Source of the DNA: Octopus sinensis
Taxonomy: Eukaryota
Length of the DNA: 19,910 nt
Assembly (NCBI RefSeq): GCF_006345805.1
Contig: NW_021824148.1
Coordinates: forward strand, 1 to 19,910
Direction: 5' to 3'
The translations under genes were made by a program, and so were the position numbers. The number at the start of each line of letters is the position of its first letter. Position 1 is the stretch's first letter. Shown here piece by piece: positions 4,674-14,838 of this stretch. Below the pieces are notes generated by a model. The model was not told the origin of the DNA. It saw only the letters and a list, made by a program, of their open reading frames with translations, and searched no databases.

Positions 4674-4825
4674 GTCAACAGGAAAAATTCAGATGGCCTT
4701 ACCTTACTCATGGCTGCCTGTGAACGAGGCAATAAAGAGTTAATAACGTTATTGACAAAATCTGGCGCTGATCTCAACATCGGTGACGAAGACAAGTGGA
4801 CAGCATTGCATTATGCAGTGGAGAA
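4674..4825 (+). CDS. Ankyrin-repeat gene exon A1 (152 nt, phase 0 to 2): VNRKNSDGLTLLMAACERGNKELITLLTKSGADLNIGDEDKWTALHYAVE
   Basis: Long (CT) pyrimidine tract plus CAG acceptor at 4671-4673, donor GTAAGG at 4826, ankyrin motifs GxTxL..A...G and TALHYA. Confidence 0.92.
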
Positions 4826-5227
4826 GTAAGGCTTGAATTAACTAAAATCTTCAGATCTGCTTTTGTTTCAAAATTTCTTGCAATTCCAGACAAATTGAAT
4901 ATCCAAAGATACCATAATAGTGGCAGTGTGACCCGATAACAACATGATAGTAGTAACCAAATAACATCTTTTTCTTATTTTCTCCATAAAACCTTTTCAT
5001 TGAATCACAAAAATCTTTTTCATCATTTCTTGTCATAACAGATTCTTTTTGTTTTGGAGATATTCTTTGAGATCCAACAGTTCTTAAGATTGACGCTGTG
5101 TGATTCGGTGTCCTCTCTTGATATTGATTTTGGAGAAATCGATCAATTTTTCTCCAAAGAAAATGTTATTTGAGATCTAAAACAAGAAGAAAGATCCTAT
5201 AGCTTGTTATGGCAGTAAATAATATGT

Positions 5228-5389
5228 AAATAGATTGAAATGCAATAGATCGATACTAGGGTTATAATTATGGGTGACATTTTCATTTGACACTGCTCGA
5301 AAAAAATCCCATTTTCCGTAGCGGTGTCGTATGAAATTGTCACCCATAATTATAACCCTAGTATCGATCTATTGCATTTCAATCTATTT
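5228..5389. repeat. 162-bp palindrome/hairpin, copy 1 (52-bp perfect outer arms)
   Basis: 5228-5279 is the exact reverse complement of 5338-5389. Inner TTTCAT/ATGAAA and GACAC/GTGTC also pair. Confidence 0.95.
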
Positions 5390-5731
5390 TAGATTTAGGG
5401 TTAGAGTTAGGGTGAATTAGGCTTAGGGATAGGGGTGAGGGAAGGGTATCTTTTTTACTTCGCAAATGTAAATAAACCCAATCTGTTTCTTAAACGAGGG
5501 ACATATTCATACAGCACGGAATGTTTTCACCCCAAATGGAGGTCAGCGATTGGTTATGATTGCCGAAATGCTTGAAATTAAAGTGGAAATATCTTACAAC
5601 ATATAGAATTTTCTCAATAAAGCCAAGAAAAAATGATGTTTTATAAACACATTCTACCAGTATACGAAGTTTAAAAGTGTTCAGTTAACTAGAAATTGTG
5701 TTGACATGTGCCGTTCAAAAGGAAAAGATCC
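5310..5731. mobile_element. Probable non-autonomous DNA element with TTAGGG-like array, ending GCCGTTCAAAAGGAAAAGATCC (copies end at 8718 and 18789)
   Basis: Degenerate TTAGGG units at 5394-5446. The terminal ~95 bp match, in inverted orientation, segments starting GGATCTTTTC at 10719 and 19156. Left boundary uncertain. Confidence 0.5.
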
Positions 5732-6134
5732 GTTGTTGTTTTTTGGGATTGATGAGAAATCTGCCTTCGATCAGTTTGTCTATAATTGTCAGACATTCTC
5801 TCTTTCACAAAACGATTTTCCTTCATTATATAGTTATATAATCTGTGACGATCTCTCTAATATGTGTGTATATTCTGCTAAAAGCAGTATTTGGTAGACA
5901 TGAGAAGAAGCTATACATTGTGGGATGTATAAACTAAAACTCAAGATGGTCTTGCTGGGTCGAAAATATGTATACATTATACCTTCACCTATTAATATAT
6001 GTATATACACACACATTTGTTTGCTGTATATTACGATTACATTCATGAATATACACATTTCAGTTGCTCATATTTCTTTCTCTCTCTCTCTCTTTCTATA
6101 TATATATATAAATATATATATGCGTCCATATGTA

Positions 6135-6859
6135 TAGGCATACCTACACAACTGGGCCCCACGACGAATTTGTTTCCATATAACTTTTAGACAAATGGAT
6201 ATTTTTTAATGAAATTTCTTTGACAAAAATGCTTCAGATGATGAAGATTCCAATTATATCGGAAATTGTTGTAAAAACAAATTTTCAAACGTTGAGGAGT
6301 TGACTTTCTCAAAATTCACCCAAATCCGTTTTGTTTTTCTATAACTTTCAGAAAAGTGGATATTTTGTTTCTGTGAAAATTTCTACAAATCCCTTTCAAA
6401 TGGTGTAGATTAGGATTATATCGGAATTTAACATGAAAGAACTTTAAAAATTTGATGGTTTCGCACACATACATACTGACACACATCACGGTTATTTTCC
6501 CAAAGTTCATCTTTTTATTTTCTGTTTTGTGTCAGTGTATATCTGTGCGAATCCACCAATTTTTATAATTTTCTTTATATTAAATTCCAATATAATCGAA
6601 ATCTTCACCATCTGAAACGGTTTTATTGAAAATTTCATTTGAAAATACCTATTTTTTTGGAAAGAAAGCCGACTCGGGTGAACTTTCCTAAATTTCTCTC
6701 TCCACCCACCGAAAAGGTTTTCTCACAACAAATTCCGATATAATTGGAATATTTGCCATCTGAAGCATATTTGTGAAAGAAATTTCATTGAAAAACATCC
6801 AATTTTCTAGAAGTTACAAGGAAACATTCGCCTGGGGCACACTTGTGTAGGTTTGCCTC
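6135..6859. mobile_element. Foldback/MITE-like element, copy 1 (~150-bp imperfect terminal inverted repeats, nested ~90-bp subrepeats)
   Basis: TAGGCATACCTACACAA...ATTATATCGGAAATTGTTGT (6135-6272) pairs with ACAACAAATTCCGATATAAT...TGTGTAGGTTTGCCTC (6725-6859). Confidence 0.85.
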
Positions 6860-7011
6860 TACATACATACATATTTGCATATATATTATATTATTACACA
6901 CACGAGGCTGTAGTATACATAGGTTTTTATGCATTTAATGGAACACGAGTGTATATTTAATGTAATTATTAAGTGAATGTGATGTTTTATGTTTGTTTTT
7001 CTTCCTTTCAG

Positions 7012-13216: not shown

Positions 13217-13332
13217 TTACTATGTGCTTGTGCAAATGTATATGCATGTGTTTGAGAGAGAGAGAGAGAGAGTGTGTGTGTGTGTGTGTCGTGCGTCTGC
13301 TATATTTCTTTATCAATATCGATAACGCAGCA

Positions 13333-13421
13333 ATGCTGGGATTTCATTGGTTAAAGTTCGAAGATGCTGGGATTTCATTGGTTAAAATTCGAAGATGTTG
13401 GGATTTCATTGGTTAAAATTC
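13333..13421. repeat. Three tandem 31-bp units ATGCTGGGATTTCATTGGTTAAA(G/A)TTCGAAG
   Basis: Unit starts at 13333, 13364 and 13395. Confidence 0.9.
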
Positions 13422-13810
13422 TTAAAATAGAGAGGAGGGAGATAGTTAATGGAGAGGGGAGAAGGTATCGGGGTTCGAGATGAGCGCCTAAACGGTAATG
13501 AAACAAGGTTATCTTAGCTGCACATTTCTGAAATCCAAGTTTATCATCCGAAGCAAAGCAATGAGGAATCGAGTGGAGGCAGGAACCGAGCAAACACTGG
13601 TTTATATAGAGATTAGGGGTTTTTTCTGGGGGGGACGGGACGATTGGCGTGTTAGATAGAAAGGAGGGGAAAGAGAGAGAGAGAAGGAGACCCACGAGGG
13701 AGAAATCTCTATGGCAGGACGAGGTTCGAAATAGAAAAAAACTTAATGAAACAGGAAATGCCGAAAACGTGAGACAGGCTTATATATAAATATATATGCG
13801 TCCATATGTA

Positions 13811-14528
13811 TAGGCATACCTACACACTGGGCCCACGACGAATTTGTTTCCTTATAACTTTGAGACAATGGATATTTTTTAATGAAATTTCTTTGACAAA
13901 AATGCTTCAGATGATGAAGATTCCAATTATATCGGAAATTGTTGTAAAAACAATTTTCAAACGTTGAGGAGTTGACTTTCTCAAAATTCACCCAAATCCG
14001 TTTTGTTTTCTATAACTTTCAGAAAAGTGGATTTTTGTTTCTGTGAAAATTTCTACAATCCCTTTCAAATGGTGTAGATTAGGATTATATCGGAATTTAA
14101 CATGAAAAAACTTTAAAATTTGATGGTTTCGCACACATACATACTGACACACATCACGGTTATTTTCCCAAAGTTCATCTTTTTATTTTCTGTTATGTGT
14201 CAGTGTATATCTGTGCGAATCCACCAATTTTTATAATTTTCTTCATATTAAATTCCGATATAATCGAAATCTTCACCATCTGAAACGGTTTTATTGAAAA
14301 TTTCATTTGAAAATATCTATTCTTTTGGAAAGAAAGCCGACTCGGGTGAACTTTCCTAAATTTCTCTCTCCACCCACCGAAAAGTTTTTTCTCACAACAA
14401 ATTCCGATATAATTGGAATATTTGCCATCTGAAGGATATTTATGAAAGAAATTTCATTGAAAAACATCCATTTTTCTAGAAGTTACAAGGAAACATTCGC
14501 CTGGGGCACACTTGTGTAGGTTTGCCTC
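13811..14528. mobile_element. Foldback/MITE-like element, copy 2
   Basis: Colinear with 6135-6859. Confidence 0.85.
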
Positions 14529-14681
14529 TACATACATACATATTTGCATATATATTTATATATATACACACACGAGGCTGTAGTATACATAGGTTTTTAT
14601 GCATTTAATGGAACACGAGTGTGTATTTAATGTAATTATTAAGTGAATGTGATGTTTTATGTTTGTTTTTCTTCCTTTCAG

Positions 14682-14838
14682 CCACGAAACGGATGTTGTG
14701 GCCTTCTTAGTCTCCAGTGGAGCAAATGTTAATAAGCAGACCTCACGGGGCAACACACCTCTACATTGGGCTGCGTGGAAGAACTATGAAGATGTGGTCA
14801 AAATCCTGTTAAATAGCAAAGAAAATAACAATTTACAG
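14682..14838 (+). CDS. Ankyrin-repeat gene exon B2 (157 nt): (N)HETDVVAFLVSSGANVNKQTSRGNTPLHWAAWKNYEDVVKILLNSKENNNLQ
   Basis: Same acceptor and donor as B1, open frame. Confidence 0.92.

What the first reader, a model, noticed from the sequence alone, without database searches (positions are those of the whole stretch)
4674..14838. Duplicated ankyrin exons diverge faster than their introns, at binding-face positions (natural DARPin-like diversification)
Seen: A1 vs A2 differ at 13 nt, all in the first 75 nt (11 in the first 36), with none in the last 77. B1 vs B2 differ at 15 nt. That is 28/309 nt (about 9%), giving 16 amino-acid changes against only 6 purely synonymous codon changes. Adjacent intron is far more conserved: about 7 substitutions in the ~400 bp after exon A, 1 in ~110 bp before exon B, and about 3 in ~190 bp after B. 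Changes cluster in VN[R/N][K/R]NS[D/K]G[L/V]T[L/V]LMAACE[R/Q]G and KQ[D/T]S[C/R]G[D/N]TPLHWA[V/A][M/W][N/K][K/N], often as multi-base codon changes. Established: the beta-turn and first-helix positions form the ankyrin ligand-binding groove and are the ones randomised in DARPins. Inference: diversifying selection (or conversion from paralogs) on a recognition surface, as expected of a rapidly evolving innate-immune or ligand-sensing receptor family.
Basis: partly seen in the sequence, partly recalled or inferred. Interest (0 to 1): 0.8.

Follow-up and report, generated by a model that had tools for sequence, protein, structure and literature searches.

The report
Hypervariable ankyrin exons in an octopus gene family
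An octopus gene for an ankyrin-repeat protein carries a tandemly duplicated exon pair whose two copies differ mainly at the ligand-binding positions, because it belongs to a young gene family that keeps and swaps variable binding-surface "cassettes" while its introns stay almost identical.

Summary
The counts are correct. A1/A2 differ at 13 nt, B1/B2 at 15 nt, giving 16 amino-acid changes and 6 purely synonymous codons. Exons diverge 9.1% against 2.8% for introns (p=1e-6).

The window holds the 5' part of an Octopus gene: exon 1, A1, B1, A2, B2 and C, with intact splice sites and one 320-aa open frame. Annotated paralogs ("MIB2-like", O. vulgaris and O. sinensis) add a RING and a Death domain.

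The A1 patch is nucleotide-identical to another locus (L003). The A2 patch recurs in L002 and L004, and L004 is a chimera. Synonymous divergence in the exons (0.115) is also about four times intron divergence, and overall dN/dS is 0.79. The A differences are therefore shared cassettes, not mutations made after the duplication.

Across eight related loci, exon diversity is three to five times intron diversity, with a sharp step at exon borders. 30 of 35 DARPin-randomised positions vary, against 48 of 153 others (p=3e-9). At those positions pN/pS is 1.7-2.3.

My best reading is diversifying selection on the binding face, acting together with exchange between paralogs that is confined to exons. 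The closest analogue is the hypervariable ankyrin repeats of fungal NLRs. An immune role is untested.

The parts
1147..1230 (+). Coding exon 1 (MDVDKIISKIRNGDFKDVKRFIKKNPDK; N-terminal cap), phase 0, donor gtaagt
   Evidence: tblastn with the N-termini of P0121 and P0123; alignment to L003-L005
4414..7393 (+). Duplicated unit 1 (A1, a shortened A-B intron, B1)
   Evidence: Self-blast 4414-6121 = 7395-9115 (94.3%) and 6103-7393 = 13781-15052 (95.6%). Unit 1 lacks the canonical middle of the intron (the equivalent of 10708-13780) that L003-L007 have
4674..4825 (+). Exon A1 (152 nt; ANK repeat I and the first 13 residues of repeat II)
   Evidence: Splice sites cag|GTC..GAA|gtaagg
4681..4709 (+). 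A1 variable patch (RKNSDGLTLL), 'alpha' cassette
   Evidence: 11 of the 13 A1/A2 differences lie here. The patch region 4678-4712 is nucleotide-identical over 35 nt to L003:13584
7012..7168 (+). Exon B1 (157 nt; rest of ANK repeat II and repeat III)
   Evidence: Splice sites cag|CCA..CAG|gtcagc
7070..7114 (+). B1 variable patch (D.C.D....VMNK)
   Evidence: 10 of the 15 B1/B2 differences lie here. The patch is unique among the sampled loci
7393..7395 (+). Tandem-duplication junction: the B-downstream intron (..AAAACAC), one filler A, then the A-upstream intron (GAGTGTAAC..)
   Evidence: Compared with the canonical B-downstream sequence in B2, L001, L002, L006 and L007, and with the A1 upstream sequence
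7395..15052 (+). Duplicated unit 2 (A2, the canonical long intron with retroelement insertions, B2)
7667..7818 (+). Exon A2; variable patch 7674-7702 (NRNSKGVTVL), 'beta' cassette
   Evidence: Splice sites. The patch is shared with L002 (1 nt different) and L004
9160..10707 (+). 5'-truncated non-LTR retroelement inserted in the A2-B2 intron; ends in a (GAT)n tail
   Evidence: It interrupts the canonical (TA)n|TCCATATAGG sequence that is intact in L003, L007 and window copy 3. Its ORFs are listed
14682..14838 (+). Exon B2; variable patch 14740-14784 (T.R.N....AWKN)
15286..15543 (+). Exon C (258 nt; 2.5 ANK repeats of 34 aa; internal 102-nt tandem repeat)
   Evidence: tblastn; self-blast 15312-15426 vs 15414-15528, 79%. 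Homologous to L001:1612-1869, L002:13741-13998 and L007:22287-22544
18174..19466 (+). Third, exon-less partial copy of the A-B intron (equivalent to 5110-6121 plus 10708-11017); start of a further 5'-truncated unit
   Evidence: Self-blast. The junction with the upstream LINE fragment is shared by O. sinensis chromosome locus L007

Best explanation
The window holds the 5' part of one member of a young, multi-copy Octopus gene family. Family members encode ankyrin repeats followed, in the annotated paralogs, by a RING finger and a Death domain.

In this member a ~3-kb segment carrying exons A and B (three ankyrin repeats, 103 codons) was duplicated in tandem and in frame. The break shows no homology and has one filler base.

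The two copies are no closer to each other than to other family members. Their differences are drawn from a family-wide pool of variants at the beta-turn and first-helix (ligand-face) positions. Two processes appear to create and maintain that pool together:
1. Sequence exchange between paralogs and between repeats (gene conversion or unequal recombination). It is in effect confined to exons and brings in blocks of linked synonymous and non-synonymous differences.
2. Diversifying selection that retains amino-acid differences at the binding face, while the repeat framework stays under purifying selection.

What is shown: the gene structure, the duplication, the exon-bounded peak of diversity, the sharing and chimerism of cassettes, and the excess of non-synonymous change at binding-face positions.

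What is inferred: that selection rather than relaxed constraint drives the excess; that exchange is limited to exons because only exons remain similar to more distant paralogs; and that the proteins are variable-specificity E3-ligase/death-fold adaptors, possibly in innate immunity.
For: Structure:
- Splice sites and one open 320-aa frame.
- Duplication and its junction.
- Family membership and domains: Octopus vulgaris and O. sinensis proteins with Ank, zf-C3HC4_3 and Death domains.

Exon peak:
- Pair: 9.1% in exons against 2.8% in introns, p=1e-6.
- Five loci over 4.8 kb: pi about 2.5% background, 10-11% at exon 1 and exon A.
- Minimum events per site: exon A 0.243 against intron 0.089 (p=1e-6); exon B 0.263 against 0.055 (p=2e-10).
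- Flanks within 50 nt of the exons are at 0.02-0.06, against 0.33 inside the exon.
- Exon B divergence is 8-14% whether introns differ by 1.3-4% or by 12-14%.

Exchange:
- A1 patch = L003; A2 patch = L002 and L004; L004 is chimeric.
- Conflicting site patterns occur within 11 nt. Rm is at least 6 in the 152 nt of exon A, against 5 in 1265 nt of intron.
- dS of the pair is 0.115, about four times intron divergence.
- The number of repeats in exon C differs between paralogs.

Selection:
- Pair: 8 of 18 DARPin positions changed against 8 of 85 others, p=0.001.
- Family: 30 of 35 against 48 of 153, p=3.5e-9.
- pN 0.284 against pS 0.134 at those positions.
- 51 N to 2 S minimum events, p=0.003.
- pN(H) over pooled pS is 2.3, CI 1.6-3.3.
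- In L008, seven tandem repeats (86% identical) vary only at positions 1, 2, 3, 5, 10, 12, 13, 14 and 29.

Literature:
- These positions are the ones randomised in the ANK-N5C and DARPin libraries, on the concave face (PMC4308713, PMC8229355; the 2, 3, 5, 13, 14, 33 set is from my own knowledge of Binz et al. 2003).
- An exon peak of divergence between low-divergence introns is the published signature of selection under gene conversion (PMC3924837).
Against: - Whole-exon dN/dS of the pair is 0.79, and framework positions give 0.65-0.94.
- Synonymous divergence is raised as much as non-synonymous divergence.
- Non-binding exons (linker exon E: pS 0.051, pN 0.043, flanks 0.010; exon D: pS 0.19, pN 0.17) show the same roughly four-fold excess. 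Much of the exon/intron contrast therefore does not need selection on the binding face.
- The sample is small (4-7 sequences per exon). Pairs are not independent, and recombination violates tree-based tests. No codon-model likelihood test could be run.
- Positions 16-18, which are not on the concave face, also vary.
- The B1 and B2 patches have no donor in the sample.
- The species of the window and the orthology of L003 are unknown.
- No expression, population or read-level data were available. The RING and Death parts of this particular gene lie outside the window.
Confidence: 0.6

Rival explanations
1. Neutral cassette exchange only. Exon-limited gene conversion from more divergent paralogs or repeats, possibly templated by spliced transcripts, imports blocks of change. 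Variation survives only at the positions that any ankyrin repeat tolerates, because the framework is under purifying selection. There is no positive selection for diversity.
For: - dS is raised about four-fold over introns, and overall dN/dS is 0.79.
- Linker, C-terminal ANK and RING exons also exceed their flanks, with pN roughly equal to pS.
- The A patches are shared between loci together with their linked synonymous differences.
- Eight of 34 variable exon-B sites carry, as the minority allele, the state of the distant subfamily locus L008.
- The step at the exon borders is sharp.
Against: Relaxed constraint can raise pN/pS to 1 but not above it. At positions fixed beforehand, pN/pS is 1.7-2.1, pN over pooled pS is 2.3 (CI 1.6-3.3), and the minimum-event count is 51 N to 2 S. 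Neutral conversion should also homogenise the copies rather than hold 8-14% exon divergence between loci whose introns differ by 1-4%.
Confidence: 0.22
2. After the tandem duplication, the two exon copies accumulated new point mutations under positive selection, faster than the neutral introns.
For: - The B1 and B2 patches are unique in the sampled loci and consist mostly of single-codon non-synonymous changes with an invariant framework between them.
- B1/B2 dN/dS is 1.34.
Against: - Both A patches exist at other loci, nucleotide for nucleotide, including three purely synonymous codons.
- Unit 1 and unit 2 are as far from each other in their introns (2.2%) as from other paralogs (2.0-4.1%). 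The pair is therefore an ordinary pair of family members.
- A1/A2 dN/dS is 0.50 with dS 0.15.
Confidence: 0.1
3. Artefact or decay. The tandem arrangement is a mis-join of paralogs or haplotypes in a hard-to-assemble array, or the copies are decaying pseudogenes, so the pattern has no functional meaning.
For: - The related O. sinensis loci are mostly short unplaced contigs.
- L002 carries a 5-bp insertion in exon 1 and a 1-nt deletion in exon B.
- L008 has a frame break in its repeat array.
- The window contains a third, exon-less partial unit.
Against: - All five window exons after exon 1 keep their splice sites, and the exons together give one open frame.
- The junction is a clean novel adjacency.
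- Unit 2 has its own retroelement insertion and unit 1 its own deletion.
- The odd junction at 18174 is also present in an O. sinensis chromosome.
- Decay would not make exons diverge faster than introns or concentrate the change at binding-face codons.
Confidence: 0.06

Closest known systems
Highly internally conserved, hypervariable ANK (and TPR, WD) repeats of fungal NOD-like receptors (Podospora anserina; Dyrka et al. 2014, PMC4986451)
   Same: - Near-identical repeats whose variation is confined to a few positions on the concave face (inner helix and beta-hairpin).
- Differences in repeat number between copies.
- Reshuffling of repeats within and between family members (concerted evolution), with positive diversifying selection.
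- The L008 array meets their criterion of at least 85% identity over at least 100 aa.
   Different: - This is an animal. That paper finds such repeats in only 0.8% of metazoan ANK/TPR/WD proteins.
- No NACHT or NB-ARC domain was found in the paralogs. The partner domains are RING and Death.
- The repeats are split over exons, so part of the shuffling happens at the level of exon pairs and is bounded by introns.
Designed ankyrin-repeat libraries (DARPins; ANK-N5C, PMC4308713)
   Same: A fixed consensus-like framework, with diversity at positions 2, 3, 5, (10), 13, 14 and 33 in the beta-turn and first helix. The window pair changes 8 of 18 such positions and the family 30 of 35.
   Different: This is natural, germline-encoded, and spread over paralogs rather than a synthetic library. 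It also varies at positions 1, 12 and 16-18. No binding has been demonstrated.
Duplicates kept similar by gene conversion with a selected 'peak of divergence' (red/green opsin exon 5, RHCE/RHD; reviewed in PMC3924837)
   Same: Exon divergence far above that of the flanking introns in tandem or near-tandem duplicates. This is interpreted as selection opposing homogenisation.
   Different: Many loci are involved rather than two. The peak is present in every exon examined. Cassettes are chimeric rather than two fixed alternatives. Ongoing conversion of the introns was not shown here.
Mind bomb 2 (MIB2), the name the automatic annotation gives the paralogs
   Same: Ankyrin repeats followed by a C3HC4-type RING. 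MIB1 appears among the PDB sequence matches.
   Different: No MIB/HERC2 or ZZ domains were detected. A Death domain is present and there is one RING. This is a name resemblance, not orthology.
TRIM5 / fish finTRIM-type arrays (RING E3 ligases with a positively selected recognition domain); from my own knowledge, not tested here
   Same: The same logic: RING effector, rapidly diversifying recognition module, tandem lineage-specific expansion.
   Different: The recognition module is B30.2/SPRY, not ankyrin. There is no Death domain and no sequence relationship.

Membership tests
Ankyrin repeat proteins (Pfam Ank / Ank_2) | Repeat HMM match above the curated threshold | tested here: met
   Spliced window protein: Ank_2 421.6 bits (cut-off 27.3), Ank 237.5 bits, 8 stretches. 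Best PDB sequence matches are ankyrin-R/B, NOMPC and DARPins
Octopus 'MIB2-like' ANK-RING-Death paralog family | Homology of exons and introns to annotated members | tested here: met
   Window 705-6122, 6097-7250 and 14921-18177 align at 91-97% to O. sinensis contigs that carry P0009, P0027, P0121-P0124 and P0014. Substitution divergence is 2.1-3.9%
Octopus 'MIB2-like' ANK-RING-Death paralog family | C-terminal RING (zf-C3HC4_3) and Death domain in this very gene | not testable with these tools
   The window ends 4.4 kb after exon C. Both domains are present in paralogs P0001 and P0009, while P0003 has the RING but no Death-domain hit. They lie 19-27 kb downstream of exon C in L001
Mind bomb 2 (MIB2) orthologues | N-terminal MIB/HERC2 and ZZ domains | tested here: not met
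   The Pfam scan of P0001, P0003 and P0009 lists only Ank families, zf-C3HC4_3, Death and weak extras. The gene starts with a 28-codon cap exon that runs directly into ankyrin repeats
Fungal-NLR-type hypervariable ANK repeats | NOD (NACHT or NB-ARC) domain | tested here: not met
   No such hit in the paralogs
Fungal-NLR-type hypervariable ANK repeats | High internal conservation (at least 85% identity over at least 100 aa) | tested here: inconclusive
   The window units u1 and u2 are 84.5% identical over 103 aa, just below the criterion. Related locus L008 has 7 repeats (238 aa) with a mean of 86%
Fungal-NLR-type hypervariable ANK repeats | Repeat-number variation between copies | tested here: met
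   The A-B unit is present twice in the window and once in L002. Exon C holds 2.5 repeats (window, L001, L002, L007), 3.5 (P0003) and about 8-9 (L008)
Fungal-NLR-type hypervariable ANK repeats | Positive selection at concave-face positions | tested here: met
   pN/pS 1.7-2.1; 51 N to 2 S events (p=0.003); pN over pooled pS 2.3 (CI 1.6-3.3) at library positions. The tests are count-based, the sample is small, and no likelihood model was run
Duplicates under gene conversion with a selected divergence peak | Exon peak with low-divergence flanks | tested here: met
Duplicates under gene conversion with a selected divergence peak | Direct evidence of sequence exchange between copies | tested here: met
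   Shared and chimeric patches; four-gamete conflicts (Rm at least 6 in 152 nt). Recurrent mutation at hypervariable codons cannot be excluded for exon B
Canonical ankyrins (ANK-ZU5-UPA-Death) | ZU5/UPA module between the repeats and the Death domain | tested here: not met
   Not among the Pfam hits of the paralogs

The most novel reading that the evidence does not exclude
Octopuses carry a germline 'natural DARPin library'. This would be a lineage-specific array of ANK-RING-Death proteins whose ligand face is diversified by cassette exchange confined to exons (possibly templated by spliced transcripts, given the sharp exon borders and the raised synonymous divergence) together with diversifying selection. 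The proteins would act as variable-specificity intracellular sensors or restriction-type E3 ligases in cephalopod innate immunity. That would make them an animal counterpart of fungal NLR repeat diversification and of TRIM5/finTRIM.
Probability: 0.2. Interest if true: 0.8.

Novelty: new variant of a known kind. Interest (0 to 1): 0.55.

Why it matters
Cephalopods have no adaptive immunity, and little is known about how they achieve recognition diversity. This would be a multi-copy family combining three things: a ubiquitin-ligase RING, a death-fold signalling domain, and an ankyrin surface that varies exactly where engineered binders are randomised. Such a family is a concrete candidate for a diversified recognition repertoire.

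It would also be a rare animal example of the "conserved repeat, hypervariable face, concerted evolution" mode that is described mainly for fungal NLRs.

The exon-bounded excess of both synonymous and non-synonymous divergence is a clean test case for how gene conversion and selection interact in a young intron-containing family. It also allows a test of whether exchange can be templated by spliced RNA.

If the pattern turns out to be neutral cassette exchange, the locus is still a useful warning that "exons faster than introns" does not by itself show positive selection.

Tried and rejected
Searches and tool calls that led nowhere:
- A third protein search using an alignment of A+B units returned only generic short ankyrin proteins (Wolbachia and others) and no new family members. 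The 103-aa single-sequence search scored only 7 candidates, but it did yield four useful O. sinensis fragments.
- Contig look-ups for P0003, P0006 and P0004 found nothing on record. P0012's gene range was too long to return DNA, so only one O. vulgaris locus (L008) was obtained.
I did not try another route. The mapping to the binding face therefore rests on sequence register (G4, T6-P7-L8-H9) and on published library designs.
- Rfam and tRNA scans of the window found nothing.
- Literature searches for an octopus or cephalopod ANK-Death or MIB2-like expansion found no description of this family.

Explanations I rejected:
- An RNA-editing or A-to-G-biased origin of the differences. The spectrum is 13 transitions to 15 transversions, of which 9 are A/G.
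- A CpG or GC-content effect as the cause of a three- to five-fold exon excess. Exon GC is 0.39-0.43 against 0.32 for the intron, and CpG density is similar.
- A simple post-duplication divergence history.
- An assembly artefact at 18174. The same junction is present in O. sinensis chromosome CM016885.1.

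
Full report
**What is in the window**

The sequence is eukaryotic. It has TG, TA and CT microsatellites and reverse-transcriptase fragments. A self-comparison shows a ~3-kb unit present twice in tandem:
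- 4414-6121 matches 7395-9115 at 94.3%.
- 6103-7393 matches 13781-15052 at 95.6%.
- A third, partial copy lies at 18174-19138.

Each full unit carries two short exons with canonical splice sites:
- A1 4674-4825 and B1 7012-7168.
- A2 7667-7818 and B2 14682-14838.

A plus B is 309 nt, or 103 codons, or three ankyrin repeats. The B-to-A splice is in frame. Upstream lies a 28-codon first exon (1147-1230) and downstream an exon C (15286-15543, 2.5 repeats). Spliced together, these exons give one open 320-aa ankyrin protein. Pfam Ank_2 scores 421 bits, and the best PDB sequence matches are ankyrin-R/B, NOMPC and DARPins.

**Check of the observation**

- A1/A2 differ at 13 nt: 11 in the first 36 nt and none after nt 75. 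The clustering has p=6e-6.
- B1/B2 differ at 15 nt.
- There are 16 amino-acid changes and 6 purely synonymous codons.
- Exons differ at 28 of 309 nt (9.1%) against 75 of 2640 (2.8%) for the introns of the unit, Fisher p=1e-6.
- One intronic patch (5412-5558) is also dense, with 15 differences.

**What the gene is**

The closest proteins are automatically named "E3 ubiquitin-protein ligase MIB2-like", "ankyrin-3-like", "ankycorbin-like" and similar, from Octopus vulgaris and O. sinensis. They combine ankyrin repeats with a C3HC4-type RING and a Death domain. They lack the MIB/HERC2 and ZZ domains of true MIB2, the ZU5 of ankyrins, and any NOD domain.

I fetched eight loci:
- L001-L007 from O. 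sinensis assembly GCA_006345805.1: six unplaced contigs (L001-L006) and one chromosomal locus (L007).
- L008, one O. vulgaris chromosome locus.

Introns and the upstream region of the window align to L002-L005 over about 5 kb with only 2.1-3.9% substitutions. The tree is star-like. L008 belongs to a more distant subfamily, with 12-14% intron divergence. The window is therefore from an Octopus of the vulgaris/sinensis group. I could not determine the exact species.

**History of the duplication**

The junction at 7393/7395 joins the intron downstream of B to the intron upstream of A. It has one filler base and no homology. After the duplication:
- Unit 2 kept the canonical long A-B intron (10708-11409 and 13214-13780 are shared with L003-L007) and gained a retroelement at 9160-10707.
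- Unit 1 lost the middle of that intron at a TA repeat.

These private changes argue for a real arrangement rather than a mis-join, although only long reads can prove it. L002 has a single A-B unit, so the doubling is specific to this gene. In their introns the two units are as far from each other (2.2%) as from other paralogs (2.0-4.1%).

**Why "diverged faster after duplication" is not the right history**

- The A1 patch (35 nt, RKNSDGLTLL) is identical in nucleotide sequence to L003.
- The A2 patch (NRNSKGVTVL) recurs in L002 with one difference, and in L004.
- L004 combines the first two A1-type codons with the A2-type remainder.
- The two patch types differ at three purely synonymous codons (GGC/GGT, ACC/ACG, CTC/CTT). 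They are therefore old alternative cassettes, not recent mutations.
- Site patterns conflict within 11 nt. The minimum number of recombination events is 6 in the 152 nt of exon A against 5 in 1265 nt of intron, and 6 against 2 for exon B.
- For the pair, dN is 0.092 and dS 0.115, giving a ratio of 0.79. Both are about four times intron divergence.
- The B1 and B2 patches have no match in my sample. For exon B, new mutation or unsampled donors both remain possible.

**The family-wide pattern**

- Nucleotide diversity among five loci is about 2.5% along 4.8 kb, but 10-11% at exon 1 and exon A.
- Minimum mutational events per site are 0.243 (exon A) against 0.089 (its introns), p=1e-6, and 0.263 (exon B) against 0.055, p=2e-10.
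- The step is sharp. Flanks within 50 nt of the exons are at 0.02-0.06, against 0.33 inside the exon.
- Exon B differs by 8-14% between any two loci, whether their introns differ by 1.3% or 14%. Exon variation is therefore saturated and uncoupled from locus age.
- Exon C differs by 16-22% between loci whose downstream intron differs by 2-3%. Part of this arises because the paralogs retain different repeats of a longer array: 2.5, 3.5 and about 8-9 repeats.
- In L008, seven tandem 34-residue repeats are on average 86% identical. They vary only at positions 1, 2, 3, 5, 10, 12, 13, 14 and 29.

**Binding-face test**

I numbered each repeat by the invariant G4 and T6-P7-L8-H9. I fixed in advance the positions randomised in DARPins: 2, 3, 5, 13, 14 and 33. 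That set comes from my own knowledge of Binz et al. 2003. Two papers support the placement: PMC8229355 puts the randomised positions on the concave face, and PMC4308713 randomises 2, 3, 5, 10, 13 and 33 in the beta-turn and helix 1.

- In the family, 30 of 35 vary against 48 of 153 (p=3.5e-9).
- Summed Nei-Gojobori counts give pN 0.284 and pS 0.134 at these positions, against 0.079 and 0.122 elsewhere.
- A tree-free count gives 51 non-synonymous to 2 synonymous events (ratio 5.4, p=0.003), against 68 to 22 elsewhere.
- pN at these positions over the pooled exon pS is 2.3, with a bootstrap 95% CI of 1.6-3.3.
- Positions 1, 10 and 16-18 also vary.

**A complication: all exons are affected**

- Linker exon E differs at 8 of 180 nt between L001 and L002, against 10 of 980 in its flanks (p=0.003; pS 0.051, pN 0.043).
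- ANK exon D differs at 37 of 222 against 25 of 499 (pS 0.19, pN 0.17).
- The RING exon differs at 5 of 123 against 8 of 1000.

A roughly four-fold excess that affects synonymous and non-synonymous sites alike, and is bounded by exon borders, cannot come from selection on a binding face alone. The simplest cause is exchange with more divergent paralogs or repeats that still resemble these genes only in their conserved exon frameworks. For example, the 3' part of exon B is nearly invariant across all seven loci, L008 included. Templating by spliced transcripts is a more speculative variant of the same idea. Eight of 34 variable exon-B sites carry, as the minority allele, the state of the distant L008, which fits a shared pool of variants. 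The mutation spectrum (13 transitions to 15 transversions) and the CpG content do not suggest an editing or CpG cause.

**Mechanism I commit to (confidence about 0.6)**

This is a young, concertedly evolving ANK-RING-Death family. Exon-limited exchange supplies cassettes, and diversifying selection keeps different residues on the concave ankyrin face. The A/B exon-pair doubling in this gene is one more repeat-number change of the kind seen elsewhere in the family, and its two copies simply sample that pool.

An exon peak of divergence between near-identical introns is the published signature of selection acting against homogenisation in duplicated genes (PMC3924837).

**Comparison with what is known**

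[quoted passage not shown] These show repeat-number polymorphism, concerted evolution and positive selection on the concave face (PMC4986451). That paper reports such repeats in only 0.8% of metazoan repeat proteins.

The octopus family behaves like that system but is not a member of it. It has no NOD domain, its partners are RING and Death domains, and its shuffling is structured by introns. It resembles DARPin and ANK-N5C libraries in which positions vary. It is not a MIB2 orthologue. I found no paper describing this family in cephalopods.

**Verdict**

The implied history is wrong for exon A, and a gene-wide exon excess was overlooked. I rate this a new variant of a known kind, with interest 0.55. 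An immune role is plausible from the domain logic but is entirely untested.

Noticed in passing
window 5228-5389 (also 8221-8382 and 18292-18453): A 162-nt hairpin-forming element (70-nt arms, 94% complementary, 22-nt loop) sits about 400 nt downstream of exon A in every copy of the intron, and also in L002 and L004. It may be a MITE, or a long dsRNA stem. In a cephalopod a long dsRNA stem could be an ADAR substrate.
   Followed up: partly
window 5412-5558: Intronic hot patch with 15 differences between units 1 and 2. Unit 1 and L002 share one haplotype (including a GGT/CTC triplet at 5541-5543), while unit 2 and L003-L005 share the other. That grouping conflicts with the grouping seen in exon A. 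Patchy exchange is therefore not strictly limited to exons.
   Followed up: partly
window 6108-6886 (also 13781-14566): A ~780-bp foldback element (arms 6108-6336 and 6661-6886, 76-77% complementary) lies upstream of exon B. It is present at every B locus examined, including the distant L008.
   Followed up: no
window 9160-10707, 11252-13060 (+) and 17245-18210 (-): Three retroelement fragments. The first is an insertion private to unit 2, with a PHD/C1-like finger ORF (9289-9498) and a (GAT)n tail. The other two carry RVT_1 reverse-transcriptase matches.
   Followed up: partly
window 18174-19910: A third, exon-less partial unit: the 3' part of the A-B intron, followed by copies of 10708-11017 and 9882-10335. 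It is joined directly to the LINE fragment. The same junction exists in O. sinensis chromosome CM016885.1 (L007), where exons B and C follow it, so a further 5'-truncated gene probably starts just beyond the window.
   Followed up: partly
window 15312-15528; L008 14641-15611: Exon C contains a 102-nt tandem repeat (79% identical in the window). In the O. vulgaris locus L008 the same exon is expanded to about 8-9 near-identical ankyrin repeats, followed by a frame break near 15440.
   Followed up: partly
L002 exon 1 region (equivalent to window 1147-1230) and L002 12818-12973: This O. sinensis paralog has a 5-bp insertion in exon 1 and a 1-nt deletion in exon B. It is probably a pseudogene or carries assembly errors, and its annotated protein starts at an internal Met.
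   Followed up: no
L001 22315-22884; L008 26207-27084: Between the RING and Death exons there is a tandem array of 17-codon segments (VCPKCKEKAVKTV...-like) spaced about 166 nt apart: four in L001 and six in L008. This is a second repeat-number-variable module in the family.
   Followed up: no
L001 vs L002 and L007: exons D, E and the RING exon: Exons that do not encode the binding face are also three to five times more diverged than their flanking introns, with pN roughly equal to pS. The exon excess is therefore gene-wide.
   Followed up: partly
window 1-1000: About 1 kb of imperfect TG/GCTTGTG microsatellite (GC skew +0.69) lies upstream of the gene.
   Followed up: no
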